From Mizuhopecten yessoensis (lineage: Eukaryota): a stretch of DNA of 61,319 nucleotides. Made by a program: the position numbers and the translations under genes. The number at the start of each line of letters is the position of its first letter. Position 1 is the first letter of the stretch. The stretch lies in NCBI RefSeq assembly GCF_002113885.1, contig NW_018479869.1:22321-83639 (forward strand), given 5' to 3'. The notes under the pieces are model-generated. The model was given only the letters and a program-made list of their open reading frames with translations, did no database searches and was not told where the DNA came from. Of this stretch, positions 40,714 through 61,319 are shown in pieces.

Positions 40714-41844
40714 TAACAGTTAAATATAACACTTGTGACTTATGACGTTGTCTTTCGATCAGTACAAATGAAACGCAAATATATTAACGCCTGTAGTAAA
40801 TTTTATATCAGGCACAGATACATTTTATTTTGTCTTTTCTAAAATAGACATTTATCCGTTTTCTCAAGGTTCTAACAGCTCCCAATACATTAAAACAGGA
40901 AGTTTATATTGAAGCAAGTGTAATAAAGTGAGTGTGAGTACATACCAATCAGTCAGAATCCTACCCTACTACGAACAACTCCAGGACAGTGTAATAAAGT
41001 GAGTGTGAGTACATACCAATAAGTCAGAATCCTACCCTACTACAAACAACTCCAGACAGTATAATAAAGTGAGCGTGAGTACATACCAATCAGTCAGAAT
41101 CCTACCCTACTACAAACAACTCCAGGACAGTATAATAAAGTGAGTGTGAGTACATACCAATCAGTCAGAATCCTACCCTACTACAAACAACTCCAGACAG
41201 TATAATAAAGTGAGTGTGAGTACATACCAATCAGTTAGAATCCAACCCTACTACAAACAACTCCAGGACAATATAATAAAGTGAGTGTGAGTACATACCA
41301 GTCAGTTAGAATCCAACCCTACTACAAACAGCTCCAGACAGTATAATAAAGTGAGTGTGAGTACATACCTATCAGTAAGAATACAACCCTACTACAAACA
41401 ACTCCAGACAGTATAATAAAGTGAGTGTAAGTACATACCAATAATATAATAATCCTATAATATACGATATAAATCGTCTGTTGTAACTCATAACAGTTAA
41501 ATATAACACTTGTGACTTATGACGTTGTCTTTCGATCAGTACAAATGAAACGCAAATATATTAACGCCTGTAGTAAATTTTATATCAGGCACAGATACAT
41601 TTTATTTTGTCTTTTCTAAAATAGACATTTATCCGTTTTCTCAAGGTTCTAACAGCTCCCAATACATTAAAACAGGAAGTTTATATTGAAGCAAGTGTAA
41701 TAAAGTGAGTGTGAGTACATACCAATCAGTCAGAATCCTACCCTACTACAAACAACTCCAGACAGTATAATAAAGTGAGTGTAAGTACATACCAATAATA
41801 TAATAATACTATAATATACGATATAAATCGTCTGTTGTAACTCA
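40714..41844. repeat. Tandem duplication (~40714-41489 and ~41491-41844) containing a 70-71-bp sub-repeat (~7.5 versus ~1.5 copies)
   Basis: An identical ~200-bp block TAACAGTTAAATATAACACTTG...GAAGCAAGTG starts both copies; both end in AAATCGTCTGTTGTAACTCA. Confidence 0.9.
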
Positions 41845-43715
41845 GTTTGTGACAATATAAAGGGGGTTTATAGACACCTTTGCTTTTTCGCTGTATTCTA
41901 CATATCTCTCGGAACATTTAAGGCATGGGATTTCATTCTTATGACATTTTGTACTAATGATTATTCCCCATTGAACGAAATGGCCACATGGTGAAATACA
42001 CATTTACCATGTTAACTATAACAGGATTTAATAGGAAACGTGACGAGTGCCTGGAAATTACTTGCCTCTTTGTCCATATCATATAACAACTTAAATTTAA
42101 AATTCACTCCAGTGTATAATTTGTAAACCCCAGTTCAAGATGTTTCCAATGATTGTCGGCTGTAGCCTGTATGACCGCCTCAGGGAGATTGTTACATACA
42201 TCGACAGTTCTGTAGCCAAAGGAATGTTTCCTTATAACTAATTTACAATGTTTTTCCTGTATTTTTTGAGTATGCTCTCTTATTCAAGATGTTGAGTCTG
42301 GATCAAAGATGCCAGCTTTGGTACAAGCTTTCTGCATATACGAACAACATTTACAAATAGGTGTTCCATTCCTTTGTATTTCTAATGAGAAATGGTAACA
42401 GGTACATTGTACATGAAATTTGGGAATTACATTTAAAAAGGCATTTCATGAAGATGATTATGAATCAAAGTACTAACCGACTTATAAGCAGTGCCTTTCA
42501 TTGTGTGTTTTTAAAGAAGCAACTTTTGAAAATACGCGAGACACATTTATCACCAATAATCAGTAAATAGACAGTTAATTGGTGGACAAGGGAGTTACGT
42601 AGCTTTGCTGTGTTATCATTCATACAGTGCAATGGAGAGTGAAAACTGTCTTATACATTAAAATCCTCATAAAAACAACGGAAGGTATTTTTAAAGACGT
42701 AATCTAACGTAAAATCTTTACCTGGTCTCGATCTTACAGAGCAATACCTAGGGGTACGTACCCCCGGGTTGAGGTCGAAGTTCATCAGTAATATTATCCA
42801 AAAGATAAATACCTCAGGTTAGGAAGAACTTACGATAAAACTATGTTGCCCTGCTATATATGTATGCCTAGTGCTGTAATTTTTCATTTCTGAAATAACG
42901 GAAATCACAAACAAACAAGAAAATTGAATAATATTTTAACACACACGGCAATATATTCTAGATTCACATAGAATTCCATACACCCCATACAAACGACACT
43001 TGTGAAAGGAAAATACCAGAAAGAATGGAATGTACAAGAAGGCAACAGTGGCACGGGAAGCGACGAACTTTAGAAAAGCAGAGTGTTTTGAATAGTGGAC
43101 AGTGTACTTAGCGCCGTCTGTGTCAGAGAAGATCACTTCCACGATTTCGCATTAAATATATTCTAGTATGTTTCCCATTCGATTTCTGCCTACAGTTGTT
43201 CAAAGTTTGTATAGTTTGTATAGTTTAATGTTGTTTGTATAGTTTGTATAGTTTAGTATAGTTTGTATAGTTAAGTATAGTTTGTTTAGTTTAGTATAGT
43301 TTGTATAGTTTATATAGTTTAGTAAAGTTTGTATAGTGAAGAATAGTTTGTATAGTTAAGTATAATCTGTATAGTTAAGTATAGTTTGTATAGTTTGTAT
43401 AGTTTAGTATTGTTTGTATAGTTTAGTATAGTTTGTATAGTTTAGTATAGTTTAGTATAGTTTGTATAGTTTAGTATATTTTATTTGGTTTAGTATAGTT
43501 TGTATATTTTAGAATAGTTTGTGTAGTTTAGTATAGTTTGTATAGTTAAGTATAGTTTATTATAGTTTGTATGTTTAGTATAGTTTAGTATAGTATGTAT
43601 AGTTTAGTATAGTTTGTATAGTTTGTTAAGTTTGTATGGTTTAGTATAGTTTGTATTGTTTGCATGTTTAGTATAGTTTGTATGGTTTAGTATAGTTATG
43701 TAGTTTTTATGCTTA

Positions 43716-43896
43716 TGTGGTGTTTGTTGACGTTCTGTAAGCGTGCGAATGACTGTGAGTGAAGCATGTGAGTGACCTCGAATTGTTCATGCATGTGTTT
43801 TGTTCCAAGATAAAAAGTACCCAAGCTGAGATAGCTGTCCAGTGTTCTATATTTGTGAAGCGTATGTGTGCCGACTGTACTGGTACGAATACAACA
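43716..43896 (+). repeat. 5' LTR (181 bp)
   Basis: TGTGGTG...TACAACA; no differences from the 3' LTR seen by eye. Confidence 0.97.
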
Positions 43897-43897
43897 A

Positions 43898-43911
43898 TGG
43901 CGTCACGAGCA
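43898..43911 (+). promoter_or_regulatory. Primer-binding site, tRNA-Ser(CGA)-type
   Basis: TGGCGTCACGAGCA lies 1 nt after the LTR and is complementary to a tRNA 3' end ...CGUGACGCCA, as in metazoan tRNA-Ser(CGA) with a GUCACG acceptor stem. Confidence 0.75.
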
Positions 43912-44291
43912 TTCCCGAGTCTGTTCGCGGAGGTCATGGATACGCTAGAATCCGAGGAGAATTTCTAGTGGGATTAATACAAGAGACGTAGAATCCCGGG
44001 TAGAGGGTGCGCGCCATCTTTGATTGTCTTTTGTGTGATACACGTGTTTTGTGTTTCACGTTGTCCCAATGTTTATGTTTTGTGTTTAGAGTTGTATCCT
44101 GGGTAGAGGGAGCAATTTATTCACAAATTCATTCGATAGTTGACCCGTGTAGAAGGCCAACTACTGTCTGATACCCTTGCGTGTTTTTAAATAATAAAAC
44201 AAAAACCAAAAACGAAACAAACGGAAACGGAACGGTTATCTTAGGACAATAAAAAAATAAAATATTTAGACAACATTTTATTCGTGGTCAC

Positions 44292-44579
44292 GTTGGTTAG
44301 GTGCTCTGGTGGCGCTGTACCAATGGTAACTGATGTTTGATTAATTTAGTTTCAAGTGTATTCAGTGAGGTAGGTGTTCTGTTGACGCCAGGCTGCTCTG
44401 AATATCTATATATATATTTATTAATTTTTTTTTGCTCGCTGTGGTAGGTGTTCTGTTTGACGCTAACCCTCGAGTATTATTTATATTAAAACCACAGCTA
44501 GGGTGTCGGTTGTTTTTCTCTTACTGTTCTAATATGCAGTGTGGTGGGTGGTAATTACCGCTACCCCTGTTTAATAGAA
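44292..44579 (+). other. Four related RNA stem-loops in the Gypsy leader (44292-44324, 44359-44404, 44434-44475, 44527-44579)
   Basis: GGTGC-TCTGGTG-GCGCT, GGTGT-TCTGTTG-ACGCC, GGTGT-TCTGTTTG-ACGCT and GGTGGT-AATT-ACCGCT, each on a different complementary basal stem. Confidence 0.7.
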
Positions 44580-44653
44580 ATAAATTTTGTAAAAGGATTT
44601 GGGTATATTTTTTTTTTTTTTTTCTCTTGTTGTTTCTGTGTTAACAGATCTAG

Positions 44654-45448
44654 ATGAACAAGCGGTATGCAGGGGTACTGATCGCAGATTCAAGAGCAAA
44701 TAATTTTCAAAGATTTGGTCATCCAGAGGATTTCAACATCAAATTTATAATTCAGAGAGGCGCACAAATTCAGGACCTGGTGGCATTATCAATTCCAATC
44801 GTTCGGACATTTGAACCATCAAAAACTTTAATAATAAAAGTTGCTGCTGGCATTAATGATTTGTTAAAATTGGAACGGGAGCCAGATGGGAAAATTCTAG
44901 TACCGTCAGACAGGTCACCGGACAATATTATTGAAGAACTTTCAGAATTTAGAACACGTGTACAGGTAGTTAGACCATCAAGCCGAGTTAGTTTCATCAC
45001 CATCCCTCCTGCTTCGTTAAAAGACTTTCAACTTAATAAATCCTCCAAACCAATTAACCAAAATCTGGTAACAAAATTACAAGAACAACACAATAAAACT
45101 GTGTTGGAGGTAAATTCTAGAATTCACCATTTAAATAACCAGACAGTGCCAACGGGTTGGACAGTTAAGTGGGCAGATACCATTGTTCACAAACACAAGA
45201 AAAGGAGAGGCCGTGCACGGAAAGTGATTACCGCTTACCGGTATTCCTTTGAACAGTATTACGATGGCTTACATGCCAAATCTGATGTAAAGAAAGAGTG
45301 GTACAAACAGGTGGTTTCTGGAATTCGAGGGGATATTACCAAATTGGAAAAACCAGGAAGTGAGATTCGAATTGTCACCACAGAATCTTCAGAAGAGGAC
45401 ACTCCGGTAGACACTGACGATAAAAGTTGGAAGAGACTTAAACGGTAA
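44654..45448 (+). CDS. SGNH/GDSL hydrolase-fold protein (264 aa) encoded inside the Gypsy element upstream of gag
   Basis: Blocks in the correct order and spacing: I LIADSR (Ser), II QRGA (Gly), III AAGINDL (Asn), V YYDGLH (Asp/His); uninterrupted ORF. Confidence 0.85.
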   Translation: MNKRYAGVLIADSRANNFQRFGHPEDFNIKFIIQRGAQIQDLVALSIPIVRTFEPSKTLIIKVAAGINDLLKLEREPDGKILVPSDRSPDNIIEELSEFRTRVQVVRPSSRVSFITIPPASLKDFQLNKSSKPINQNLVTKLQEQHNKTVLEVNSRIHHLNNQTVPTGWTVKWADTIVHKHKKRRGRARKVITAYRYSFEQYYDGLHAKSDVKKEWYKQVVSGIRGDITKLEKPGSEIRIVTTESSEEDTPVDTDDKSWKRLKR

Positions 45449-45454
45449 TTGTAA

Positions 45455-45568
45455 TACGGCAGCGGGTTGGTGATCTGTTGTCGCCTTATCCCCTGCACCG
45501 TAGAACTCTTAAACGATAAGTTGAGGTTGTGGGTTGGTGATCTGTTGTCGCCTTATCCCCTGCCACAA
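45455..45568 (+). other. 33-bp direct repeat (45464-45496, 45531-45563) forming two stem-loops between the SGNH ORF and gag
   Basis: GGGTTGGTGA-TCTGTTG-TCGCCTTATCCCCTGC occurs twice; basal stems TACGG/CCGTA and TTGTGG/CCACAA. Confidence 0.8.
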
Positions 45569-46971
45569 TGACTCGTATAAATTACTGTGAGAGACAAGAC
45601 CTACTACTATTGCCGGGTATTGGAGAGCGTCTGGCGGACAAAATTCTACAAGTCCGTGAAGTAATGGGGGACATTACTAAAGAGGTTCTGTTGGCCATTC
45701 CATACCTGAGGCCCACAGAGACCATGTTAAACCAAATAGACTTTACACCGCGATATGAACGGTTTACTGACATGGGTGAGAACTTGACGGGTGAGCATCA
45801 CACCTACAAAATGGACCCACCACCAAAGGTTCAACATCCTTCACCACCACGACTACAAGTTCAAAATCCAGGACCGTATTTTGACAATTATGGGTATCCT
45901 GGCAGCCGCCAGAGAGAACATCGACAGCAGTACCAGTACACTAATTACCGAGACCCATACGAACAGGAATACCACGGTCAGCCCCGTCAACCACAGTTCA
46001 ACTTTCCACCTCCAAGGTACAATCCGGGGAATCCGCCGCCAAGACGTGGACGGGTGGTAGCTCCCAAGACGTTACGCTATGATGGAAACTCCGATTGGAA
46101 AGCTTTTTGCACAAAGTTTACTAGATTCACTGAGGCGGAGAATCTTACTGCTCGTGAATGTCGGGATAACCTTTGCTGGATACTGGAGGGCAAAGCTAGT
46201 GAGTTTTTCACTATGCTCTTGGATCGTGATTCAACGATGGAATTTTTCGATATCATGTCAAAAATGGAACGCCGTTTTGGATTCAAGGAGCTGGCCGAGA
46301 CTACCCAAGCACGCCTTCGTAACGCCCGACAGTACCCTGACGAGAAGCTAGCAGATTGGGCTGATCGGGTGTTATCTTTAGCTACCAGAGCCTATCAGGA
46401 TCTGCCCGATGAGTTTATGTATAAACAAGCGATCTCCACAATTTGCCAGGGAGCAGCAGATAAAGAAGCAGGCCAATATGTTTCTAACCTAAGATTGGGA
46501 TCTATTGAGGAAGTGGTGGACAAGATGAGACTTTTTCAACATACAAGAAAGTCTATCTATGGTCGCGACCGTCCTAGACCTTCGCCTGTCGAAGAACTAA
46601 TCATACAAGAGGAAGAAGGTACTAGTGTCAGCAGGACATTCCAGCGTAGAGTCCCAAATTCTCAGTCCTCATTCCAGCCATCTTCAGCAACAAACCAAAG
46701 GCTGTCAGCCCTAGAAGACAAGGTATCGGACATGCAAAAATCCCTTAAACAAATTTTGGAGGCTGTTCGTGTCCCAGAGGAAAGGATCAAAAGGAATGTG
46801 GTTTGTTATGGTTGTGGCCAGACAGGCCATTTTAAGTCGAACTGTCCTAATGCTGAAGATAATAAATCTGTGAAACTCCTGGATGCGGCTGAAAAGACTG
46901 AAGGTGAAGAAGTAGTCCCTGGATCTGAAGAAGTTGAGGACTCGTTAAACACCGACAGGTCGGCCAACTAG
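45568..46971 (+). CDS. gag: Gag (467 aa) with an N-terminal helix-hairpin-helix motif and a C-terminal CCHC zinc knuckle
   Basis: INYCERQDLLLLPGIGERLADKILQVR (ComEA-type HhH); capsid-like YDGNSDWKAF...LEGKASEF...RQYPDEKLADW; CYGCGQTGHFKSNC. Confidence 0.92.
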   Translation: MTRINYCERQDLLLLPGIGERLADKILQVREVMGDITKEVLLAIPYLRPTETMLNQIDFTPRYERFTDMGENLTGEHHTYKMDPPPKVQHPSPPRLQVQNPGPYFDNYGYPGSRQREHRQQYQYTNYRDPYEQEYHGQPRQPQFNFPPPRYNPGNPPPRRGRVVAPKTLRYDGNSDWKAFCTKFTRFTEAENLTARECRDNLCWILEGKASEFFTMLLDRDSTMEFFDIMSKMERRFGFKELAETTQARLRNARQYPDEKLADWADRVLSLATRAYQDLPDEFMYKQAISTICQGAADKEAGQYVSNLRLGSIEEVVDKMRLFQHTRKSIYGRDRPRPSPVEELIIQEEEGTSVSRTFQRRVPNSQSSFQPSSATNQRLSALEDKVSDMQKSLKQILEAVRVPEERIKRNVVCYGCGQTGHFKSNCPNAEDNKSVKLLDAAEKTEGEEVVPGSEEVEDSLNTDRSAN

Positions 46972-49900
46972 ACCTAAGCCCGACCTTAGATGTTAAAAAT
47001 GGTCTTCATCCTACACGGTCAACAATTACACCAGATGACCTTATCAGTGAGGTAATGACTGATAACACCACCGAATCAACCCGTGTTGAACTTGATAATA
47101 TTACCCGATTACGGTCAACATCCATGTTTCAAGTGCCTGTTATCGTGGGAGGTTTTCATACAAGAGCAGTGGTGGATACCGGTGCTGAAGTATCAATCAT
47201 ATCGGATGAGGTATACAAAAACCTTGTTGAGCCACCCTCGATATTGAAACATGTGACACTTAATGCAGCAGGCAGAGATCAACCAATTGAGAGCTATATT
47301 GTTGGACCCATCGAACTAGATATAGGATCTAAGAGTTACAAGGTTAGCATTTATGTTGGACCAATTGAAGATGATATCTTGCTGGGTCTGGACTTTCTGA
47401 AGCCCAATAATGCTCAACTTGACATTTCAGGGGATACTCTTACCCTGGGTATTGGTGGAGAGAAAATTTCAGTGAACACAGGAAAAGAATTTTTACCTGC
47501 TTCCGAAGGCAAGGTATATGTACAGAAACGGACTGTAGTACCACCGAACAGTGTAGCAAGAGTGTGTTGTCGAATTTCCGGAAAGGTAGGCAGTTCTAGT
47601 CTAATTGTGGAGCCTACAGTAGAAAATGGACTACTAATTCCGAGATCATTGTATGACACAGCCTCGCAGATCAGGTTGTACTGTGTGAATGTCACGGACA
47701 GAAATATAATTCTGAAAAGGAAAACGGAAATTGCGATAGTCAATGAGGCAAGAGAAATTATTGCGAATGTTGAAAGTCATGCGGATCCCATATTTGTGGA
47801 GACATTACGCTGTGGCGAGGAAACACCGGACATTGCGCCTTCGCATGTACAGAGTCTCATTGATGGCGCGAAAGAACAGTTGTCGGTTGAGGAGTTAAGT
47901 CAATTTGCTCAACTTATTAAGGATAATTCCGATGTTTTTGCGAAAAATGACTTTGACCTGGGACATTTTAGTGCTATCAAACACAATATTGATACAGGTA
48001 CGGCACGGCCGATAAAGCAACGTTTTCGCAGAACGCCAGCATGTTTTGCCAACGAAGAGGATTTGCATCTAAAGAAGATGCTAGATTCTGGAGTTATCGA
48101 ATCCTCTACATCCGAGTGGGCGTCAGCACCAGTGCTGATCCGTAAACGTGACGGCGGAGTGCGCTGGTGCATAGATTATCGGGGACTGAACTCGGTAACT
48201 ACTAAAGACGTGTTTCCATTACCGTTAATAGAAGAATGCCTCGACGCATTGACCGATAACGTGTGGTTTTCGAAACTAGATGCCAACTCGGCTTATTGGC
48301 AAGTCCTTGTCAATGAATCGGACAGACATAAGACTGCCTTCAGTACAAAACACGGATTGTTTCAGTTTGTCAAAATGGGATTCGGACTTTGTAACGCCCC
48401 AGCAACTTATGCCAGAGTAATGAACCTGGTTCTTCGTGGATTAACATGGAACATTGTTCTTGCCTTCCTGGACGATGTGTTGGTTCTTGGGAAGACCTTC
48501 GATGAGCATCTCCAAAATCTAGCAGAAGTCTTTGAGCGCATCAGGGCGTATCAACTGAAACTCAAACCCGCTAAGTGCGAATTCTTTAAAAAGAAGGTTG
48601 ACTTCTTAGGGCGAACAGTTAGTGAAAGTGGCATTGAAACCAGTGGCAAACACATCGAAAAGATGAAGGAGTGGCCAACACCAACATCATCTAAGGATGT
48701 TGAGCAATTCTTGGGGTTTGCCAACTACCATCGCTCATTTATTCCCGAATATGCCAAAATTGCAGCTCCTCTGTACCAATTGACAGGAAAGAATGACTTT
48801 CGGTGGGATGAGGAACAGGAAAAAGCATTTTCCAGCTTAAAATCTTCCCTGAGTTCTCCACCTGTTTTGGGAATACCGAATAACAGCGATATGTTTGTGC
48901 TCGACACAGACGCATCTGACTTTGCTATTGGTGGTGAGTTGTGCCAAATTCAAGAAGGCAAGGAAAGAACAATAGCTTATGCTAGTTATTCCCTGACATC
49001 AGAACAGCGTCGCTATTGTACAACAAGAAAAGAACTTTTGGCAGTAGTTCGCTTTACCAGACAGTTTCGCCATTATCTGCTTGGTCGCAAGTTTGTGGTG
49101 AGAACTGATCACAACAGTTTGGTTTGGTTGCTCAACTTCAAAAATCCCCAAGGACAACTGGCGAGATGGCTTGAAGAGTTAAGCCAGTATGATCTAACTA
49201 TTGTACACCGAAAAGGAAAAGACCATCAAAATGCTGACAGTCTCTCCCGGAGTCTACCAAAAGACCAGTGCGGAAACTTGAAACATGGGCAAGATCCTAC
49301 CACGTTACCATGCGGAGGATGTGCCTATTGTACTCGGGCTCATGAACATTGGCATCAGTTTATCTCTGATGTGGACGAGGCGGTCTCTCTAAGTAACATA
49401 CCCTGCGTACAAAAAGTAACCCAGTCTGACAATACTTTCGCCGTGGAAGGAAGTCTATATAGCGAGAATTTGACCATAGAAGTGTCTGCTTTTGGAATAA
49501 ATATCCTCACTAGATCTGAAAGGAGTGATATTGAAGACATGAACGTCAACGCCTTGGATATTCAATTCTCGGGTTACTCGGCAAAGGAAATCCGGACTGC
49601 TCAGGAGCAAGATCCAGAGTTATCTATACTGCTAGAGTGGGTAAAGAATAAGAAAGAGGTGGACGAAGGAGAACTGTTTGGATCCAGTAGAGCCATAAAG
49701 TATTACTGGATTAACCGTGAGTTATACTTCCTGGATGAGTCTGGTATATTGTGGAGGAAGGATCTAGAAGACACTAGCAAAACTCAATCCTTGGTTATAC
49801 CTCCCAGTATGAGAGAAGACGCTATTTCTTTGTGCCATGACATCCCGGCTAGCGCTCATCAGGGAATCAACCGAACAGAATCCATGGTTCGCCAGAGGTT

Positions 49901-51080
49901 CCATTGGTATGGCTTGCCTCGCGACGTTCAAAAGTTCGTGAAATCCTGTGTCATCTGCAACACCAAGAAAAAAGCCAGTCGAAAGGCTCGATGCCCGTTG
50001 ACTCTTTTCCAATCAGGGGAACCCATGGAAAGAGTTCATCTTGACTTCTTGGGCCCACTACCCATAACAGCAACAGGAAATGAACACATATTAGTTATGG
50101 TAGACCAGTTTACCAAATGGGTTGAATGTGTTCCCTTACCTTCGCAGACCGCCGCGACAACCGCAAAAGCAGCTGTAAACGAATTCTTCGCGAGATTTGG
50201 ATATCCGTTCCAAATTCATACAGACCAAGGTAGAAACTTTGAAAGTCGTCTGTTTAAAGCTTTGTGTGAAGTTACGCAAATTCATAAAACTCGTACAACG
50301 GCTTATAGACCTTCTGCCAATGGACAAGTGGAGAGGTATAATCGCACCATCATGAACGCAGTTCGATGCTTCATAAACTCTCAAAGTGAATGGGACATCT
50401 ATTTACCACAGCTAGCTGGCGCGCTAAGGTGTTCCGTAAACCGCCAAACTGGACATACCGCCAACAAGTTAATGCTGGGCCGGGAGACCAATCAGCCTGC
50501 AGATCTCTTGTATGCCGCTCCATCGAACAAGAAGGCGAAGGACTCTCGCGACTCTGAAAGTTATGTGGACAATTTGGTAGATGCAATTCAGCGTGCCCAT
50601 GAAACCGCCAGAAAAACCCTTGCCACAACGCAGAGGAGAATGAAACGTGATTACGATGTTCGCGTTTACACTACCGAGTTCATTGAAGGGGATGTGGTCT
50701 ACGTCTTCGACAATGCAACGCCTAAGGGACAAAATCCCAAGTTAAAGGCCGTTTGGAAAGGTCCTGGACTCATAGTCAAAAAGTACACGCCGTACGTCTA
50801 TGGAGTACAGATGGGGAAGACGCGACAAGTCATTAATCACGATCGATTAAAAATGTGTAATGACCGTAAGCGACCCCAATGGATAATCGATCTCCAGGAG
50901 CACCGAGCGGAACCGGTAGAGGAAACCCACTGTGTCTGCCATCAAACGGATGATGGGACCATCATGATCCAGTGTGACTTTTGTTTTGTGTGGTTCCATG
51001 GACGTTGTGTGGGCTTAAATGTAGAGGAAGCCGAACAGCTGGAACTTTATTGCTGTACTACGTGTGAACTATCTGTATAA
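46938..51080 (+). CDS. pol: Pol polyprotein (protease, RT, RNase H, integrase, PHD finger); frame open from 46938, first ATG at 47055
   Basis: VDTGAEVS; RWCIDYR, FGLCNAPATY, FLDDVL; DTDAS, TDH; HHCC zinc finger; DFLGP...TDQGRNFES...NGQVERYN; WKGP; terminal C4HC3 PHD. Confidence 0.97.
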   Translation, partial: GLVKHRQVGQLDLSPTLDVKNGLHPTRSTITPDDLISEVMTDNTTESTRVELDNITRLRSTSMFQVPVIVGGFHTRAVVDTGAEVSIISDEVYKNLVEPPSILKHVTLNAAGRDQPIESYIVGPIELDIGSKSYKVSIYVGPIEDDILLGLDFLKPNNAQLDISGDTLTLGIGGEKISVNTGKEFLPASEGKVYVQKRTVVPPNSVARVCCRISGKVGSSSLIVEPTVENGLLIPRSLYDTASQIRLYCVNVTDRNIILKRKTEIAIVNEAREIIANVESHADPIFVETLRCGEETPDIAPSHVQSLIDGAKEQLSVEELSQFAQLIKDNSDVFAKNDFDLGHFSAIKHNIDTGTARPIKQRFRRTPACFANEEDLHLKKMLDSGVIESSTSEWASAPVLIRKRDGGVRWCIDYRGLNSVTTKDVFPLPLIEECLDALTDNVWFSKLDANSAYWQVLVNESDRHKTAFSTKHGLFQFVKMGFGLCNAPATYARVMNLVLRGLTWNIVLAFLDDVLVLGKTFDEHLQNLAEVFERIRAYQLKLKPAKCEFFKKKVDFLGRTVSESGIETSGKHIEKMKEWPTPTSSKDVEQFLGFANYHRSFIPEYAKIAAPLYQLTGKNDFRWDEEQEKAFSSLKSSLSSPPVLGIPNNSDMFVLDTDASDFAIGGELCQIQEGKERTIAYASYSLTSEQRRYCTTRKELLAVVRFTRQFRHYLLGRKFVVRTDHNSLVWLLNFKNPQGQLARWLEELSQYDLTIVHRKGKDHQNADSLSRSLPKDQCGNLKHGQDPTTLPCGGCAYCTRAHEHWHQFISDVDEAVSLSNIPCVQKVTQSDNTFAVEGSLYSENLTIEVSAFGINILTRSERSDIEDMNVNALDIQFSGYSAKEIRTAQEQDPELSILLEWVKNKKEVDEGELFGSSRAIKYYWINRELYFLDESGILWRKDLEDTSKTQSLVIPPSMREDAISLCHDIPASAHQGINRTESMVRQRFHWYGLPRDVQKFVKSCVICNTKKKASRKARCPLTLFQSGEPMERVHLDFLGPLPITATGNEHILVMVDQFTKWVECVPLPSQTAATTAKAAVNEFFARFGYPFQIHTDQGRNFESRLFKALCEVTQIHKTRTTAYRPSANGQVERYNRTIMNAVRCFINSQSEWDIYLPQLAGALRCSVNRQTGHTANKLMLGRETNQPADLLYAAPSNKKAKDSRDSESYVDNLVDAIQRAHETARKTLATTQRRMKRDYDVRVYTTEFIEGDVVYVFDNATPKGQNPKLKAVWKGPGLIVKKYTPYVYGVQMGKTRQVINHDRLKMCNDRKRPQWIIDLQEHRAEPVEETHCVCHQTDDGTIMIQCDFCFVWFHGRCVGLNVEEAEQLELYCCTTCELSV
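46944..47005 (+). promoter_or_regulatory. Putative -1 ribosomal frameshift signal (G TTA AAC plus stem-loop/pseudoknot)
   Basis: pol is -1 to gag and overlaps it over 46938-46971; slippery heptamer at 46944-46950 in the correct phase; 6-nt spacer; stem AGGTCGG/CCGACCT. Confidence 0.75.
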
Positions 51081-51116
51081 GTGTGAACTGACTCCACAGT
51101 ATACAGGGACTTCTAT

Positions 51117-51130
51117 AAAAGAGGGAGGAA
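51117..51130 (+). promoter_or_regulatory. Polypurine tract
   Basis: AAAAGAGGGAGGAA directly before the 3' LTR. Confidence 0.9.
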
Positions 51131-51311
51131 TGTGGTGTTTGTTGACGTTCTGTAAGCGTGCGAATGACTGTGAGTGAAGCATGTGAGTGACCTCGAATTG
51201 TTCATGCATGTGTTTTGTTCCAAGATAAAAAGTACCCAAGCTGAGATAGCTGTCCAGTGTTCTATATTTGTGAAGCGTATGTGTGCCGACTGTACTGGTA
51301 CGAATACAACA
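51131..51311 (+). repeat. 3' LTR (181 bp)
   Basis: Matches the 5' LTR; followed by the CTTA TSD. Confidence 0.97.
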
Positions 51312-52803
51312 CTTAGTATAGTTTAGTATTGGCTTGTATAGTTTAGTATTGGCTTGTATAGTTTAGTATAGTTTGCAGAGTTTAGTATAAATTGTACAGT
51401 TTAGTATATTTTATATAGTTTAGTATAGTTTGTATCGTTTAGAATAGTTTGTATAGTTTGTATATTTTGAATATTTTAGTATATTTTGTATAGTTTGTAA
51501 GGTTTAGTATAGTTTATTATAGTTTGTACTTTTAGTATAGTATGTATAGTTTAGTATAGTTTGTATGGTTTAGTATAGTTTGTATTGTTTGCATGTTTAG
51601 TATAGTTTGTATAGTGTGTATAGTTTAGTATAGTTTGCATAGTTTAGTATAGTTTGTATAATTTAATATAGTTGGTATAGTTTATTATAGTTTGTATGTT
51701 TAGTGTAGTTTAGTATGTATAGTTTGTATAATTTAGTATTGTTTGTATAGTTTAGTATAGTTTAATTTAGTCTGTATTTTTAGTTTAGTTTAGTATAGTT
51801 TAGTATAGTGTGTATAGTTTAAGTTAGTTTGTATAGCTTCATATGGTTGGTATAGTTTATTATAGTTTGTTTGTTTAGTTTAGTTTAGTATAGTATCTAT
51901 AGTTTGTATAGTTTAGTATAGTTTGTAAAGTTTTATGGTTTAGTATAGTTTGTATGTTTAGTATAGTTTAGTATAGTTAAGTATAGTGTTTATAGTTTGT
52001 ATAGTTTGGTATAGTTTAGAATAGTTTACTATAGTTAAGAATAGTTAAGTATAGTTTGTATAGTGTGTATAGTTTGCATAGTTTAGTATAGTTTGTATAG
52101 TTTAATATAGTTGGTATAGTTAATCATAGTTTATCATAGTTTATCATAGTTTGTATGTTTAGTTTAGTATGTATAGATTGTATAGTTTAGTATTGTTTGT
52201 ATAGTTTAGTATAGTTTGTATAGTTAAGTATAGTTTGTATGTTTAGCATAGTTTGTATTGTTTGCATGTTTAGTATAGTTTGTATAGTGTGTATAGTTTA
52301 ATATAGTTTGCATAGTTTAGTATAGTTTGTATAATTTAATATAGTTGGTATAGTTTATTATAGTTTGTATGTTTAGTTTAGTTTAGTATGTATAGTTTGT
52401 ATAATTTAGTATTGTTTGTATAGTTAAGTATAGTTTAATTTAGTCTGTATTTTTAGTTTAGTTTAGTATAGTTTAGTATAGTGTGTATAGTTTAGTTTAG
52501 TTTGTATAGCTTCATATAGTTGGTATAGTTTATTATAGTTTGTTTAGTTTAGTTTAGTATAGTATCTATAGTTTGTAAAGTTTAGTATAGTTTGTATGTT
52601 TAGTATAGTTTAGTATAGTTAAGTATAGTGTTTATAGTTTGTATAGTTTGGTATAGTTTAGAATAGTTTTCTATAGTTAAGAATAGTTAAGTATAGTTTG
52701 TATAGTGTGTATAGTTAAGAATAGTTAAGTATAGTTTGTATAGTGTGTATAGTTAAGAATAGTTAAGTATAGTTTGTATAGTGTGTATAGTTAAGAATAG
52801 TTT

Positions 52804-53707
52804 NNNNNNNNNNNNNNNNNNNNNNNNNNNNNNNNNNNNNNNNNNNNNNNNNNNNNNNNNNNNNNNNNNNNNNNNNNNNNNNNNNNNNNNNNNNNNNNNN
52901 NNNNNNNNNNNNNNNNNNNNNNNNNNNNNNNNNNNNNNNNNNNNNNNNNNNNNNNNNNNNNNNNNNNNNNNNNNNNNNNNNNNNNNNNNNNNNNNNNNNN
53001 NNNNNNNNNNNNNNNNNNNNNNNNNNNNNNNNNNNNNNNNNNNNNNNNNNNNNNNNNNNNNNNNNNNNNNNNNNNNNNNNNNNNNNNNNNNNNNNNNNNN
53101 NNNNNNNNNNNNNNNNNNNNNNNNNNNNNNNNNNNNNNNNNNNNNNNNNNNNNNNNNNNNNNNNNNNNNNNNNNNNNNNNNNNNNNNNNNNNNNNNNNNN
53201 NNNNNNNNNNNNNNNNNNNNNNNNNNNNNNNNNNNNNNNNNNNNNNNNNNNNNNNNNNNNNNNNNNNNNNNNNNNNNNNNNNNNNNNNNNNNNNNNNNNN
53301 NNNNNNNNNNNNNNNNNNNNNNNNNNNNNNNNNNNNNNNNNNNNNNNNNNNNNNNNNNNNNNNNNNNNNNNNNNNNNNNNNNNNNNNNNNNNNNNNNNNN
53401 NNNNNNNNNNNNNNNNNNNNNNNNNNNNNNNNNNNNNNNNNNNNNNNNNNNNNNNNNNNNNNNNNNNNNNNNNNNNNNNNNNNNNNNNNNNNNNNNNNNN
53501 NNNNNNNNNNNNNNNNNNNNNNNNNNNNNNNNNNNNNNNNNNNNNNNNNNNNNNNNNNNNNNNNNNNNNNNNNNNNNNNNNNNNNNNNNNNNNNNNNNNN
53601 NNNNNNNNNNNNNNNNNNNNNNNNNNNNNNNNNNNNNNNNNNNNNNNNNNNNNNNNNNNNNNNNNNNNNNNNNNNNNNNNNNNNNNNNNNNNNNNNNNNN
53701 NNNNNNN
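52804..53707. other. Assembly gap (N run) within the satellite
   Basis: 904 N bases. Confidence 1.
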
Positions 53708-55796
53708 ATAGTTAAGTATAGTTTGTATAGTGTGTATAGTTAAGAATAGTTAAGTATAGTTTGTATAGTGTGTATAGTTAAGAATAGTTTGTATAGTGTG
53801 TATAGTTTGCATAGTTAAGTATAGTTTGTATAGTGTGTATAGTTAAGAATAGTTAAGTATAGTTTGTATAGTGTGTATAGTTTGCATAGTTTAGTATAGT
53901 TTGTATAGTTAAATATAGTTGGTATAGTTAATTATAGTTTATCATAGTTTATCATAGTTTGTATGTTTAGTTTAGTATGTATAGATTGTATAGTTTGTAT
54001 AGTTTAGTATAGTTTGTATAGTTAAGTATAGTTTGTATGTTTAGTATGGTTTAGTATTGTATAGTTTGTACAGGTTGCATAGTTTAGTAGTTTGTATAGT
54101 TTGTATAGTTTAGTATAGTTTGTATAGTTTAGTATAGTTTGTATAATTTGTATAGTTTAGTATTGTTTGTATAGTGTATATAGTTTGCATAGTTTAGTAT
54201 AGTTTGGTATAGTTTAGTATAAATTGTACAGTTTAGTATATTTTATATAGTTTAGTATAGCTTGTATAGTTTAGTATAGTTTGTATAGTTAAGTATAGTT
54301 TGTATAGTTTAGTATAGTTTGTATAGTTTAGTATAGTTTGTAGTGTGTATAGTTTTCATAGTTTAGTATAGTTTTTATAGTTTAATATAGTTGGTATAGT
54401 TTATTATCGTTTGTATGTTTAGTTTAGTATGTATAGTTTAGTATAGTTTGTATAGTTAAGTATAGTTTGTATGTTTAGTATGGTTTAGTATTGTATAGTT
54501 TGTGCAGGTTGCATAGTTTAGTAGTTTGTATAGTGTGTATAGTTTAGTATAGTTTGTATAATTTGTATAGTTTAGTATTGTTTGTATAGTGTATATAGTT
54601 TGCATAGTTTAGTATAGTTTGGTATAGTTTAGTATAAATTGTACAGTTTAGTATATTTTATATAGTTTAGTATAGCTTGTATAGTTTAGTATATTTTGTA
54701 TAGTTAAGTATAGTTTGTATAGTTTAGAATAGTTTGTATAGTTAAGTATATTTTGTATAGTTTAGTATAGTTTGTATAGTTTAGTATAGTTTGTATAGTT
54801 TAGTATAGTTTGTAGTGTGTATAGTTTGCATAGTTTAGTATAGTTTTTATAGTTTAATATAGTTGGTATAGTTTATTATCGTTTGTATGTTTAGTTTAGT
54901 ATGTATAGTTTAGTATTGTTTGTATAGTTAAGTATATTTTGTATGGTTTAGTATAGTTTGTATTGTTTAGTATAGTTGTATAGTTTTTATGCTTAGTTTA
55001 GTTTAGTATTGTCTTGTATAGTTTAGAATAGTTTGTATAGTTTAGTATAGTTTGTATAATTTGTATAGTTTAGTAAAGTTTGTAGATAGTTAAGTATAGT
55101 TTGGTATAGTGTATATAGTTTACATAGTCTTTTATAGTTTGGTAAAGTTTAGTTAGGTATAGTTTAGTATAAATTGTACAGTTTAGTATATTTTATATAG
55201 TTTAGTATAGTTTAGTTTAGATAGTTAAATATAGTTTAGTATAGTTTGTATCGTTTAGAATAGTTTGTATATTTTAGTATATTTTGTATAGTTTATATAG
55301 TTTAGTATATTTTGTATAGTTAAGTAAAGTTTGTAGATAGTTTAGTATAGTTTGGTATAGTTTAATATAGTTTGTATAGTTAAGTATAGTTCAGTATAGT
55401 TTGTATGTTTAGTATAGTATGTCTAGTTTAGTATAGTTTGTATAATTTGTATAGTTTAGTATAGTTTGTATAGTGTATATAGTTTGCATAGTTTAGTTTA
55501 GTACAGTTTAGTATATTTTATATAGTTAAGTATAGTTTGTATAGTTTCATTTAGTTGGTATAGTTTATTATAGTTTGTATGTTAAGTATAGTTTGTATAG
55601 TTTAGTATAGTTAAGTATAGTTTGTATAGTTTAGTATATTTTGTATAGTTAAGTATTGTTGGTATAGTTTAATATAGTTGGTATAGTTTATTATAGTTTG
55701 TATGTTTAGTTTAGTTTAGTATTGTTTGTATAGTTTGTATAGTTTAGTATAGTTGTATAGTTTTTATGCTTAGTATAGTTTAGTATTGTCTTGTAT

Positions 55797-55910
55797 TTTT
55801 TGTTTGTTTGATTTTTTTTAACGTCCTATTAACAGCTAAGGTCATTTAAGGACGGCCTCCCCTGTGTGCAAGATGCATGCGTGTAGTGTTTGCGTGTGTA
55901 TTTTGGGAGG
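55797..55910 (-). mobile_element. 5'-truncated SINE 3' end with a (CAAA)n tail and a 12-bp TSD
   Basis: Minus strand ...ATGACCTTAGCTGTTAATAGGACGTTAAAA...CAAACAAACAAAAA; ATTGTCTTGTAT at 55785-55796 and 55911-55922. Confidence 0.85.
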
Positions 55911-56751
55911 ATTGTCTTGTATAGTTTAGTATAGTTTGTATAGTTTGCATAGTTTGTATAATTTAGTATAGTTTGTATAATTTGTATAGTTTAGTATAGT
56001 TTGTATAGTGTATATAGTTTGCATAGTTTAGTATAGTTTGGTATAGTTTAGTATAGTTTAGTATAAATTGTACAGTTTAGTATATTTTATACAGTTTAGT
56101 ATAGTTTGTATAGTTAGTTTGTATCGTTTAGAATAGTTTGTATAGTTTGTATATTTTGTATAGTTTAGTATATTTTGTATAGTTTGTAAAGTTTATTATA
56201 TTTTGTATAGTTAAGTAAAGTTTGTAGATAGTTTGGTATAGTTTGGATAGTTTAATATAGTTTGTATAGTTAAGTATAGTTTGTATGTTTAGTATAATAT
56301 AGTTTAGTATAAATTGTAGTTTAGTATATTTTATGTAGTTCAGTATAGTATGTCTAGTTTAGTATAGTTTGTATAGTTTAGTATAGTTTGTATAGTGTAT
56401 ATAGTTTTCATAGTTTAGTAGTTTAGTTTAGTATAAATCGTACAGTTTAATATATTTTATATAGTTAAGTATAGTTTGTATAGTTTAGTATAGTTTGTAT
56501 AGTTTGGTTAGTTTAGTATAGTTTGTATGGTGAAGTATAGTTTGTATGTTTAGTATAGTTTGTATAGTTTAGAATAGTTTGTATAGTTTAGTATATTTTG
56601 TATAGTTAAGTAAAGTTTGTATAGTTTTAGTATACTATGTATAGTCTAGTATAGTTTGTAAAGTTAAGTATAGTTTGTTTAGTTTAGTATAGTTTAGAAT
56701 AGTTTGTATAGTTAAGTATATTTTGTATAGTTTAGTATAGTTTGTATAGTT

Positions 56752-59700: not shown

Positions 59701-60715
59701 GACATCGCATTAGGTATGCTTGGTTTATCATCACTTCATTTATACGTAGATCAATGTAAGCTTCGCTTTTTTGCGGCATTATGTAGAACCAAAACTAATT
59801 GTACATCTAAACAGCTGTTTTTATTGCGATTGTATCAAAATCGCCTTGGTGTAAATAAAGCTAAAAAGGGTTTTATTGTTGATGCAATTGACATACTGTA
59901 TAAGTACAACTTTAATGACTTTTTAAATGAATTTTTTAAGTCGGGTAATTTTCCTCCAAAGTTATGTTGGAAACATCTAGTTAAAAATGTTCTTCTTTGT
60001 AAAGAATCAGAAGACTGGAAAACTCGTTTAAATCATTCGTCTTATTTTTCGAGATTCAAAAATCTTTATCCTGAAATGACACCTTCAGTGATCTGGTACT
60101 TTTCAAAATGTCATCCTTCTTTTATTGGAATTTGCAAAACTGTTTCCAAAATGTGGATTGCTCCATCTGATTGCGAACTATTTTGCGCTAATAGCAAGAG
60201 TACTTTTGAAGACGCAGTCGCCCATTGTTTGTTAGACTGCGGCGAATTAGAATTAGCAAATTTGCAGGATACACTTTTGACGAACTTTGTAAATAAATAT
60301 CCTGTGTATGTTTATGTGTCTTTCGACCAGTCAGACAGAGAAGTCCAGGTGGCTACTCTGCTTGGTGCTCCAAGCGATGTTATTTGTGATACTCTTAATG
60401 ACGATGTAAAATCGCTCACGTCTTTTATCAAAGATTGCCTAATATTTGCGGAAAAAGCGTTCTATATGACCTTCCAATAAATCTAGCTAATTTTGTAGCA
60501 GCCATTGCAATGAGTCTTCCTTTAACCACCTTTCATTGACTTATAACGTGTCTTTACATTTTCTTCAAGATGTGATTATGAAATGATATTAATATCAATT
60601 GTATCTCAATTTTTGTCAGCACCATTTTTTTGTTGTTCTCATGTCACTTGGACTCACCATTCTCATCCACATTGTACTCTTCATTATTTTGGAGGAAATA
60701 AAGATATGAATGAAT
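56752..60715 (+). mobile_element. 5'-truncated non-LTR retrotransposon (RTE-X/CR1-group-like): ORF1 tail plus near-complete ORF2 (APE-RT) with three in-frame stops
   Basis: ORF1 tail FWPNGIRVRKW. APE: MTWNVTG, ICGISEHWL, MGDFNA, IDH, SNH. RT: KAPGVD, YRAISLL, LDASKAFDCVWH, GIRQG, QADD. Stops at 57229, 59272 and 59641, with all segments in one frame. 3' AATAAA plus (TGAA)n tail. Confidence 0.92.
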
Positions 60716-61319
60716 AGTTTAGTATAGTTTGTATAGTTTAGTATAGTTTGTATAGTGAATATAGTTTGCATAGTTTAGTATAGTTTTGTTTAGTTGAGTA
60801 TAGTTTATTATAAATTGTACAGTTTAGTATATTTTTTATATAGTTTAGTATAGTTTGTATAGTTAAATATAGTTTAGTATAGTTTGTATAGTTAGTTTGT
60901 TTCGTTTAGAATAGTTTGTATATTTTGCATAGTTTAATATATTTTGTATAGTTTGTATAGTTTAGTATATTTTGTATAGTTTAGAATAGTTTGTATATTT
61001 TGTATAGTTTAGTAAAGTTTGTAGATAGTTTAGTATAGTTTGGTATAGTTTGTATGTTTAGTATAGTATAGTTTAGTATAAATTATAGTTTAGTATATTT
61101 CATGTAGTTCAGTATAGTTTGTATGTTTAGTATAGTTTGTCTAGTTTAGTATAGTTTGTATAGGTTAGTATAGTTTGTAGCGCAAAATACTGTTCTTGCT
61201 GCTTTTTTTTTGACATTAACATATATATAAATATACATACAATGTCCATGGGCGTCTAGAATCGCCTATGGGCGTATATATTAACAAATAAGTATAAATT
61301 CACATTTTGATATAAAAAA

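What the first reader, a model, noticed from the sequence alone, without database searches (positions are those of the whole stretch)
44292..45568. Six related stem-loops, five with a UCUG loop and covarying stems, bracket the hydrolase ORF
Five hairpins share GGUGN-UCUG(U/G)(U)UG-N'CGCY. The loop-closing pair covaries: C-G (44304/44312), U-A (44377/44385, 44451/44460) and A-U (both copies at 45464-45563). Each hairpin has a different but complementary basal stem (GTTGGT/ACCAAT, TATTCAG/CTGAATA, GCTCG/CGAGT, TACGG/CCGTA, TTGTGG/CCACAA). A sixth (44527-44579) keeps the stem with an AATT loop. Covariation with a conserved loop indicates selection on RNA structure. UCUG is the established high-affinity site for the single-knuckle MLV nucleocapsid, so these may be a multivalent packaging or dimerisation signal. 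The last hairpin ends on the gag AUG, so a role in internal initiation or translational control of the second cistron is also plausible.
Basis: partly seen in the sequence, partly recalled or inferred. Interest (0 to 1): 0.8.

Follow-up and report, generated by a model that had tools for sequence, protein, structure and literature searches.

The report
Repeated RNA hairpins in retrotransposon leader
Six related RNA stem-loops really do flank the extra hydrolase gene of an intact gypsy-type retrotransposon and look selected for structure. Their function is untested (most likely a binding platform for the element's own Gag), and they are probably not needed to translate gag.

Summary
The motif GGTG-N-TCTG-N(2-4)-N'-CGCY occurs five times in 61 kb (shuffles give 0.008). 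All five copies are on the + strand, in the untranslated RNA of an intact Ty3/gypsy-type LTR retrotransposon (43716-51311). This element carries an SGNH-hydrolase-like ORF ahead of gag.

With a sixth, loop-divergent hairpin, the copies share a 3-bp plus 6-bp helix. All 54 pair cells are standard pairs. One core pair shows all four Watson-Crick types, and each core has 2-3 G.U pairs, so the fold exists only on the sense strand. Basal stems differ between copies yet pair better than shuffled flanks (combined p about 1e-4). The last hairpin is the exception.

The copies arose by local tandem duplications. One 33-nt hairpin segment is 100% identical between units whose flanks have diverged.

The function is not shown. 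I favour a multivalent Gag/nucleocapsid recognition signal. There is no specific likeness to the murine leukaemia virus system. The internal-initiation idea is weakened because the ORF1 family almost lacks methionine and AUGs, which points to leaky scanning to gag. Three distant relatives lack the motif.

The parts
43712..43715 (.). target-site duplication CTTA (5' copy); the 3' copy is at 51312-51315
   Evidence: read directly
43716..43896 (+). 5' LTR, 181 nt, TG...CA ends
   Evidence: 100% identical to 51131-51311
43898..43915 (+). primer-binding-site-like sequence starting TGG, 1 nt after the LTR; primer tRNA not identified
   Evidence: position and TGG start; no tRNA gene in the window
44292..44324 (+). 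HP1: core helix 44300-44316, loop CUGGU, basal stem GUUGGU/ACCAAU
   Evidence: flank p=0.028; core probability 0.93
44359..44404 (+). HP2: core 44373-44389, loop CUGUU, basal stem UAUUCAG/CUGAAUA; its 5' flank reads AG|GUAGGU (splice-donor-like)
   Evidence: p=0.046; 0.54
44434..44475 (+). HP3: core 44447-44464, loop CUGUUU, basal stem GCUCG/CGAGU; tandem paralogue of HP2 (unit about 74 nt)
   Evidence: p=0.005; 0.89
44536..44569 (+). HP4: same middle and core helices (core 44547-44562) but an AAUU tetraloop; divergent member
   Evidence: p=0.037; not significant for the model; 0.62
44608..44642 (+). U16 plus pyrimidine-rich tract ending ..AACAG, just upstream of the ORF1 ATG (acceptor-like; role unknown)
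   Evidence: read
44654..45448 (+). ORF1, 264 aa, SGNH-hydrolase-like, intact; no internal Met, AUG-depleted
45455..45502 (+). HP5: core 45469-45485, loop CUGUU, lower stems UACGG/CCGUA and CAG/CUG
   Evidence: p=0.023; 0.95
45527..45568 (+). HP6: core 45536-45552, loop CUGUU; shares a 33-nt exact repeat with HP5; its proposed basal stem reaches the A of the gag ATG but is not better than chance
   Evidence: D7; p=0.49; 0.95
45568..46971 (+). gag, 467 aa, intact: weak HhH-like N-terminus, Retrotrans_gag, one CCHC knuckle
46938..51080 (+). pol reading frame (first ATG 47055), intact: PR-RT-RNase H-IN-PHD; overlaps the gag end by 34 nt in the -1 frame
51117..51130 (+). polypurine tract abutting the 3' LTR
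   Evidence: read
51131..51311 (+). 3' LTR

Best explanation
The six elements are paralogous stem-loops of the sense-strand full-length RNA of an intact Ty3/gypsy-type LTR retrotransposon. This element has an extra SGNH-hydrolase-like ORF ahead of gag.

Each hairpin has:
- a 3-bp middle helix (GGU/ACC, GGU/GCU or GGG/CCC);
- a 6-bp G.U-rich core helix (GGUG-N-U / G-N'-CGCY);
- in five of six, a CUG(K)U loop with an unpaired G;
- usually a copy-specific basal stem.

The set grew by local tandem duplication. HP2/HP3 lie in units of about 74 nt. HP5/HP6 lie in units of about 67-70 nt that include a copy of ORF1's last codons. The hairpin shape has been kept since.

I infer, but have not shown, that the hairpins form a multivalent cis-acting recognition platform for the element's own Gag. 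Its single CCHC knuckle would bind the exposed G-containing loops, marking the full-length RNA for packaging.

The hairpins are probably not what lets ribosomes reach gag. That is better explained by leaky scanning or reinitiation through an AUG-depleted ORF1.

Shown: the motif, the folds, the compensatory pattern, the duplication origin and the AUG depletion. Inferred: Gag binding and packaging.
For: - Five motif copies are present, against 0.008 expected.
- All lie on the + strand in the only non-coding transcribed segments between the PBS and gag.
- All 54 helix cells are standard pairs. Core pair 5 is C-G, U-A, U-A, G-C, A-U, A-U, and middle pair 3 is U-A/U.G/G-C.
- Each core has 2-3 G.U pairs, and the + strand always folds better than its reverse complement, for example -19.4 against -9.7 kcal/mol.
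- Flanks outside the conserved core pair better than shuffled flanks: p=0.028, 0.046, 0.005 and 0.023, Fisher p=1.2e-4.
- Core helices persist in a 1.84-kb ensemble, with probabilities 0.54-0.95, and the loops stay unpaired.
- In the HP5/HP6 duplicate units the hairpin segment is 33/33 identical while the rest is about 55% identical. HP2/HP3 show the same pattern.
- Gag has one CCHC knuckle. The position between PBS and gag AUG is where retroviral packaging signals lie, and NC knuckles bind exposed G (PMC7599994).
Against: - No binding, packaging or expression data exist.
- The three related loci that could be fetched (ORF1 29-30% identical in two; 51% over a 61-residue fragment in the third) have no copy of the motif. 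One of them has no room for intercistronic hairpins. Conservation beyond this single element is therefore unshown.
- Covariation inside the aligned core rests on one pair.
- The HP6 basal stem is at chance level.
- HP2 and HP4 are only about 0.5-0.6 probable in the ensemble.
- The knuckle shows no specific similarity to the MoMuLV NC.
Confidence: 0.4

Rival explanations
1. Translational control: the hairpins, with the pyrimidine tracts that follow them, act as internal-entry, shunt or reinitiation signals placed ahead of the two independently initiated cistrons (ORF1 and gag).
For: - Hairpins precede both start codons, and HP6 abuts the gag AUG.
- There is no AUG in the 119-nt spacer.
- Pyrimidine tracts lie upstream of both AUGs.
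- The leader is long (757 nt), structured (z=-2.5) and has 7 short uORFs. This resembles the shunt leaders of pararetroviruses (PMC5902531).
Against: - ORF1 has no internal Met, and its 11 relatives have 3 Met in 2788 residues.
- ATG in any frame occurs 6 times against 14.7 expected here, and 5 against 17.6 in L001. All of them open mini-ORFs that end before gag.
- The ORF1 AUG has U at -3 and the gag AUG has A at -3 in both elements. This is the signature of scanning through ORF1, not of internal entry.
- L001 has 6 nt and no hairpin between ORF1 and gag.
- The HP6 basal stem over the AUG is at chance level.
- Hairpins of -15 to -22 kcal/mol do not stop scanning (established knowledge).
Confidence: 0.15
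2. DNA-level sites: the 17-nt core is a binding site for a host or element DNA-binding protein. The array would be an enhancer or insulator in the transcribed leader, like the Su(Hw) site array in the 5' UTR of Drosophila gypsy (my own knowledge).
For: - The whole core, including the loop, is conserved. All copies have the same orientation and arose by tandem duplication.
- The first bases of the LTR are the next-best match to the core in the window, score 12 against a background of 11.
Against: - A DNA site does not explain the copy-specific complementary flanks (p about 1e-4).
- It does not explain the compensatory pair with four Watson-Crick types.
- As DNA the two half-sites are not palindromic (GGTG against GGCG).
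- The LTR match is barely above background and is not found by the covariance model.
Confidence: 0.12
3. Splicing signals: the G-rich 5' arms are U1-binding or donor sites and the pyrimidine-rich 3' flanks are acceptor tracts. They would produce spliced RNAs that skip part of the leader or ORF1.
For: - AG|GTAGGT lies at HP2 and TG|GTAGGT at HP3.
- An acceptor-like tract ends at 45503 inside HP5, and U16..AACAG lies before the ORF1 ATG.
- L002 has three GTAAGT motifs between ORF1 and gag.
Against: - Donor-like sequence is present only in HP2 and HP3.
- It does not explain the conserved loop and 3' arm.
- AUG avoidance in ORF1 implies that ribosomes read through the unspliced ORF1 to reach gag.
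- No transcript data are available, and I built no spliced model.
Confidence: 0.08
4. No function: the copies are neutral remnants of recent duplications of one short palindromic segment, so their pairing is inherited rather than selected.
For: - The motif is seen in this one element only and is absent from three distant relatives.
- The aligned-core covariation is statistically weak.
- Two of the copies are identical.
Against: - Inherited pairing cannot explain different basal stems that are each complementary.
- It cannot explain four pair types at one position.
- It cannot explain 33/33 identity inside units whose flanks are about 55% identical.
Confidence: 0.15

Closest known systems
Leader packaging signals of retroviruses and LTR retrotransposons (for example the MoMuLV Psi with its UCUG nucleocapsid sites; PMC7599994)
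   Same: Several stem-loops lie between the PBS and the gag AUG on the full-length RNA. They carry exposed G-containing pyrimidine-rich motifs. The Gag has a single CCHC knuckle.
   Different: - Here UCUG sits in an apical loop, partly closed by a U.G pair. It is not a linker exposed by dimerisation.
- The module is repeated five or six times and is split by an extra ORF.
- The knuckle has no specific similarity to the MoMuLV NC.
- There is no Rfam match.
- No binding or packaging evidence exists.
Leaky scanning through AUG-free ORFs in rice tungro bacilliform virus and badnaviruses (PMC5902531)
   Same: A long structured leader with short uORFs is followed by an upstream ORF with a weak start and almost no internal AUGs. 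The main gag-like ORF then starts at the next good AUG.
   Different: - This is an animal-genome LTR retrotransposon, not a plant pararetrovirus.
- Six out-of-frame mini-ORFs remain inside ORF1.
- The mechanism is inferred from sequence statistics only.
GDSL/SGNH esterase ORFs of retroelements: ORF3 of bdelloid Vesta LTR elements (PMC5408684) and ORF1p esterases of CR1/L2/RTEX non-LTR elements (PMC3905857)
   Same: A retroelement-borne SGNH-type hydrolase with its catalytic residues intact.
   Different: - Here the ORF lies upstream of gag, not downstream of pol. It is a separate cistron in an LTR element.
- It has no Pfam hit.
- The L2 ORF1p esterase was not among the listed top structural matches.
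Su(Hw) binding-site array in the gypsy 5' UTR (my own knowledge)
   Same: A tandemly amplified short motif, all in one orientation, in the transcribed leader of a gypsy-type element.
   Different: The present copies carry complementary flanks, G.U pairs and a compensatory pair. These features point to RNA rather than duplex DNA.

Membership tests
Ty3/gypsy-type LTR retrotransposon (context of the finding) | Identical LTRs with TG..CA ends, target-site duplication, PBS after the 5' LTR, PPT before the 3' LTR | tested here: met
   181-nt LTRs 100% identical, CTTA duplication, TGG.. at 43898, purine tract 51117-51130
Ty3/gypsy-type LTR retrotransposon (context of the finding) | gag with CCHC, then pol ordered PR-RT-RNase H-IN | tested here: met
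   Pfam hits in that order
Retroelement packaging signal (Psi) | Structured RNA between PBS and gag AUG on the full-length RNA | tested here: met
Retroelement packaging signal (Psi) | Bound specifically by the element's Gag/NC and needed for RNA packaging | not testable with these tools
   No binding or packaging data. The decisive functional test lies outside what this report may propose.
Retroelement packaging signal (Psi) | Conserved, with compensatory changes, among related elements | tested here: inconclusive
   Paralogues within the element show compensation. Three distant relatives lack the motif.
MoMuLV-type UCUG nucleocapsid site | UCUG as a single-stranded linker exposed on dimerisation (PMC7599994) | tested here: not met
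   Here it is in an apical hairpin loop, and its first U is paired with probability 0.6-0.7
MoMuLV-type UCUG nucleocapsid site | Nucleocapsid related to the gammaretroviral NC | tested here: not met
   The knuckle's solved-structure matches are TUT7, AIR2, lentiviral and other NCs. The MoMuLV NC did not return at E<=10.
Any curated RNA family (Rfam 15) | Match to a covariance model | tested here: not met
   No relevant match at E<=1 in 43600-45800, and none at gathering score in the window
IRES / termination-reinitiation element | Downstream cistron cannot be reached by scanning | tested here: not met
   ORF1 is AUG-depleted with mini-ORFs only, has a weak ORF1 AUG and is followed by a strong gag AUG
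IRES / termination-reinitiation element | Complementarity to 18S rRNA or factor binding | not testable with these tools
   No host rRNA sequence is at hand
SGNH/GDSL hydrolase (ORF1) | Conserved blocks with catalytic Ser, oxyanion Gly and Asn, and Asp-x-x-His | tested here: met
   S13 is nearly invariant. G66, N68, D204 and H207 are invariant. G36 is nearly invariant. All in 12 sequences.
SGNH/GDSL hydrolase (ORF1) | SGNH flavodoxin-like fold | tested here: met
   Model pLDDT 75.6, pTM 0.72. 33 PDB matches at E<=0.001, and the listed ones are nearly all SGNH/GDSL-type esterases, lipases or acyl-hydrolases. TM-scores are 0.3-0.6.
SGNH/GDSL hydrolase (ORF1) | Match to a Pfam SGNH/GDSL model | tested here: not met
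   No Pfam family at E<=0.01

The most novel reading that the evidence does not exclude
The hairpin is a self-duplicating RNA module that one retrotransposon lineage uses as a common handle on its tricistronic RNA. It would be placed ahead of each independently initiated cistron and bound by an element protein: Gag, or the basic arm of the hydrolase ORF1 protein acting in cis. One signal would then couple the choice between translation (by leaky scanning) and packaging.
Probability: 0.1. Interest if true: 0.6.

Novelty: new member of a known kind. Interest (0 to 1): 0.35.

Why it matters
Packaging and RNA-recognition signals are known for very few LTR retrotransposons, and for none from marine invertebrates. 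A small, repeated hairpin with a well-defined loop, in an apparently young and intact element, would be a tractable object for structural study of Gag-RNA recognition outside the retroviruses.

The context is at least as informative as the hairpins. An SGNH hydrolase cistron lies ahead of gag and appears to be expressed by leaky scanning. This would extend to an animal LTR element a translation strategy that I could document only for plant pararetroviruses and some other viruses (PMC5902531).

Tried and rejected
The contigs of the closest ORF1 relatives (P0001, P0002 and P0007-P0011) could therefore not be read.
2. The metagenome scan with the ORF1 alignment (flank limited to 1500 nt) gave only three distant or partial loci. 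None has the motif by regex or by covariance model, and none has an obvious analogous hairpin array.
3. Long-range pairing ideas were rejected. The HP2 3' arm is complementary to the first 8 nt of the PBS, and the HP5/HP6 loop is complementary to 8 nt just upstream of the ORF1 AUG. Such 8-mer complements are at chance level: 8 seen against 11 expected.
4. HP4 as a dimerisation site was rejected. Its 10-nt palindrome is expected about 7 times in 7.6 kb by chance (my arithmetic).
5. The LTR start as a seventh copy was rejected. It scores barely above background and is not found by the model.
6. Rfam gave nothing.
7. The test for likeness to the MoMuLV NC gave only generic CCHC hits.
8. RNAalifold on a MAFFT alignment recovers the core and middle helices only weakly, because spacer lengths differ between copies. 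I therefore tabulated the pairs by coordinate.
9. The codon-shuffle test of ATG depletion is not significant. It keeps the Met-free codon set, so the depletion lies in the amino-acid composition itself.

Full report
**Context**

The window is AT-rich, repeat-rich eukaryotic DNA. The finding lies inside one LTR retrotransposon, 43716-51311 on the + strand.

- Its LTRs are 181 nt (43716-43896 and 51131-51311), 100% identical, with TG..CA ends.
- It is flanked by a CTTA duplication. A TGG-initiated PBS-like sequence lies 1 nt after the 5' LTR, and a polypurine tract abuts the 3' LTR.
- It is inserted in a 19-nt-period satellite.
- It has three open reading frames with no breaks:
  - ORF1, 44654-45448;
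  - gag, 45568-46971, with Retrotrans_gag, one CCHC knuckle and a weak sub-threshold HhH match;
  - pol, ATG at 47055, with PR-RT-RNase H-IN and a C-terminal PHD finger.
- The pol frame is open from 46938. It overlaps the end of gag by 34 nt in the -1 frame. That is the usual arrangement, not a break.

The hairpins therefore occupy the 757-nt leader downstream of the PBS and the 119-nt ORF1-gag spacer.

**The observation**

- The core GGTG-N-TCTG-N2-4-N'-CGCY occurs at 44300, 44373, 44447, 45469 and 45536, and nowhere else on either strand. Shuffles give a mean of 0.008 hits.
- Each segment folds into the proposed hairpin, with z-scores from -1.6 to -3.7.
- In a partition-function fold of 43880-45720 (maximum span 300) the core helices have mean pair probabilities of 0.93, 0.54, 0.89, 0.62 (HP4), 0.95 and 0.95, and the loops stay unpaired.
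- A covariance model built from the five cores finds only those five copies in the window and in three related loci. HP4 scores 9.8 bits (E about 5), which is noise level.

**Evidence that structure is selected**

I tabulated the pairs by coordinate.

- All six hairpins share a 3-bp middle helix and a 6-bp core helix, and 54 of 54 cells are standard pairs.
- Core pair 5 is C-G, U-A, U-A, G-C, A-U, A-U. For the four distinct types, only 1 of the 24 possible assignments of 3' partners pairs them all (my arithmetic).
- Middle pair 3 is U-A three times, U.G once and G-C twice.
- Each core has 2-3 G.U pairs, so the fold exists only on the sense strand. The reverse complement always folds worse.
- The five copies were defined by the core alone, so their flanks give an independent test. 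Compared with shuffled flanks, the real flanks give p=0.028, 0.046, 0.005, 0.023 and 0.49 for HP1, HP2, HP3, HP5 and HP6. Fisher's p is 1.2e-4 for the four independent copies.

Caveats:
- On the MAFFT alignment of the cores only one pair covaries, and 44 of 500 column shuffles do as well.
- The HP6 basal stem, the one that reaches the gag AUG, is not supported.

**Origin**

- HP2 and HP3 lie in tandem units of about 74 nt.
- HP5 and HP6 lie in units of about 67-70 nt whose upstream part repeats the last codons of ORF1. That duplication therefore came after ORF1 was in place.
- Within these units the 33-nt hairpin segment is 33/33 identical, while the remaining aligned columns are about 55% identical. 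This means purifying selection or homogenisation of the hairpin.

**Relatives**

ORF1 has no Pfam hit but has 11 relatives. The best are 45% and 41% identical, and one is annotated from the sea cucumber Holothuria leucospilota.

- S13 is nearly invariant. G66-I67-N68 and D204..H207 are invariant, with D69 nearly so. G36 is nearly invariant.
- The AlphaFold model has pLDDT 75.6. Its listed PDB matches are nearly all SGNH/GDSL-type esterases, lipases or acyl-hydrolases.
- 'Hydrolase' is therefore supported.

To read relatives' leaders I called look-up of encoding contigs.

A metagenome scan with the ORF1 alignment gave three loci. I held the flank to 1500 nt so that no near-whole element was fetched.

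- L001 is intact over the part held.
- In L002 the ORF1 copy is broken by frameshifts: three reading frames are used, so there are at least two. Its gag is split over two frames, so there is at least one.
- L003 is a fragment cut by the contig end.
- None has the motif.
- In L001, gag starts 6 nt after the ORF1 stop.

The hairpin family is so far known only from this element. Its closest relatives remain unread.

**Translation**

- ORF1 has no internal Met, and the 11 relatives have 3 Met in 2788 residues. At 1.8% Met the binomial p is about 3e-20.
- ATG in any frame occurs 6 times in ORF1 against 14.7 expected from composition. In L001 the figures are 5 against 17.6. The gag and pol ORFs are not depleted.
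- Every one of these ATGs opens a 1-19-codon ORF that ends before the gag ATG.
- In both elements the ORF1 ATG has U at -3 and the gag ATG has A at -3.
- The leader has 7 ATGs against 16 expected, all heading uORFs of 3-23 codons.

This is the pattern described for leaky scanning through AUG-free ORFs in rice tungro bacilliform virus and badnaviruses (PMC5902531). I conclude that gag is most likely reached by scanning. The intercistronic hairpins are not required for that.

**The MLV analogy**

- The paper I read states that MoMuLV NC binds a UCUG linker between two helices, and that further UCUG sites become exposed on dimerisation (PMC7599994). That geometry differs from an apical loop.
- Searched against solved structures, the knuckle of this gag returns TUT7, AIR2, lentiviral and other NCs. 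The MoMuLV NC does not return.

The general argument survives: NC knuckles bind exposed G in pyrimidine-rich context, and the position is right. The specific argument does not.

**Other readings**

- A DNA-site array has precedent in gypsy (my own knowledge). It does not explain the complementary flanks, the G.U pairs or the compensatory pair.
- Donor-like AG|GTAGGT occurs only in HP2 and HP3, and acceptor-like tracts lie at 44608-44647 and 45486-45503. I built no spliced or joined model, and there are no transcript data.
- Complementarity of the hairpins to the PBS and to the ORF1 start region is at chance level.

**Mechanism I commit to**

The hairpins are a duplicated, structure-selected sense-strand RNA module (about 0.7 that the structure is real and selected). 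Its most likely role is a multivalent recognition signal for the element's own Gag on the full-length RNA (about 0.4). Rivals are listed separately.

- I did not fill the N runs (18614; 52804-53707).
The covariance model is a 25-position profile of the hairpin, used only for searching. I did not use the 'conserved' lines printed by the alignment tools.
- I left out a scan of the viral-contig collection, because I could not tell whether hits there would count as fetching a virus of animals.
- If the operators count LTR retrotransposon fragments from metagenomes as such a virus, then one search was a borderline step. I flag it here.

Noticed in passing
window 44654-45448; L001 1492-2316; proteins P0001-P0011: The ORF1 hydrolase family almost completely avoids methionine: 0 internal Met here and 3 in 2788 residues of its relatives. 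ATG in any frame is depleted. The ORF1 start context is weak and the gag start context is good. This is the signature of leaky scanning to gag on a polycistronic RNA.
   Followed up: yes
window 43716-51311: The element has an unusual domain set for a gypsy-type element. A separate SGNH-hydrolase-like cistron lies upstream of gag, a weak HhH-like motif lies at the gag N-terminus (18.6 bits, below the Pfam cut-off), and a PHD finger lies at the C-terminus of pol (about 50931-51065). All three ORFs are intact and the LTRs are identical, so the insertion is young.
   Followed up: partly
window 46930-47010: The gag-pol overlap (34 nt, pol in the -1 frame) sits in a segment that folds better than shuffles (z=-3.0). 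It is a candidate frameshift-stimulating structure.
   Followed up: partly
window 43204-43702 and 51313-56751 (N gap 52804-53707), also 60714-61179: The element is inserted, with a CTTA duplication, into a long satellite of 9-10-nt subunits (19-nt period).
   Followed up: partly
window 57334-59274 (+) and 30946-31632 (-): Other retroelements are present. One ORF has endonuclease plus reverse-transcriptase domains (non-LTR type). A short reverse-transcriptase fragment lies on the minus strand.
   Followed up: partly
window 11942-13679; 1029-3702; 7667-8891; 40917-41442: Several large minisatellites are present, with periods of 51, 42, 37 and 70 nt. The 51-nt array is 98% homogeneous over 34 copies and carries an open frame (11798-13528).
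   Followed up: no
window 43719-43734 and 51134-51149: The first bases of each LTR resemble the hairpin core (GGTGTT-TGTTGACG). This is the best non-hairpin match in the window but only just above background, and the covariance model does not find it.
   Followed up: yes
window 43988-44113: The leader upstream of the hairpins holds two further short direct repeats (23 nt at 43988/44091 and 20 nt at 44045/44076). An A-rich stretch lies at about 44190-44237.
   Followed up: no
L002 895-1005: In this broken relative, the ORF1-gag spacer holds three GTAAGT donor-like motifs (two within an exact 10-nt repeat) in place of hairpins.
   Followed up: no
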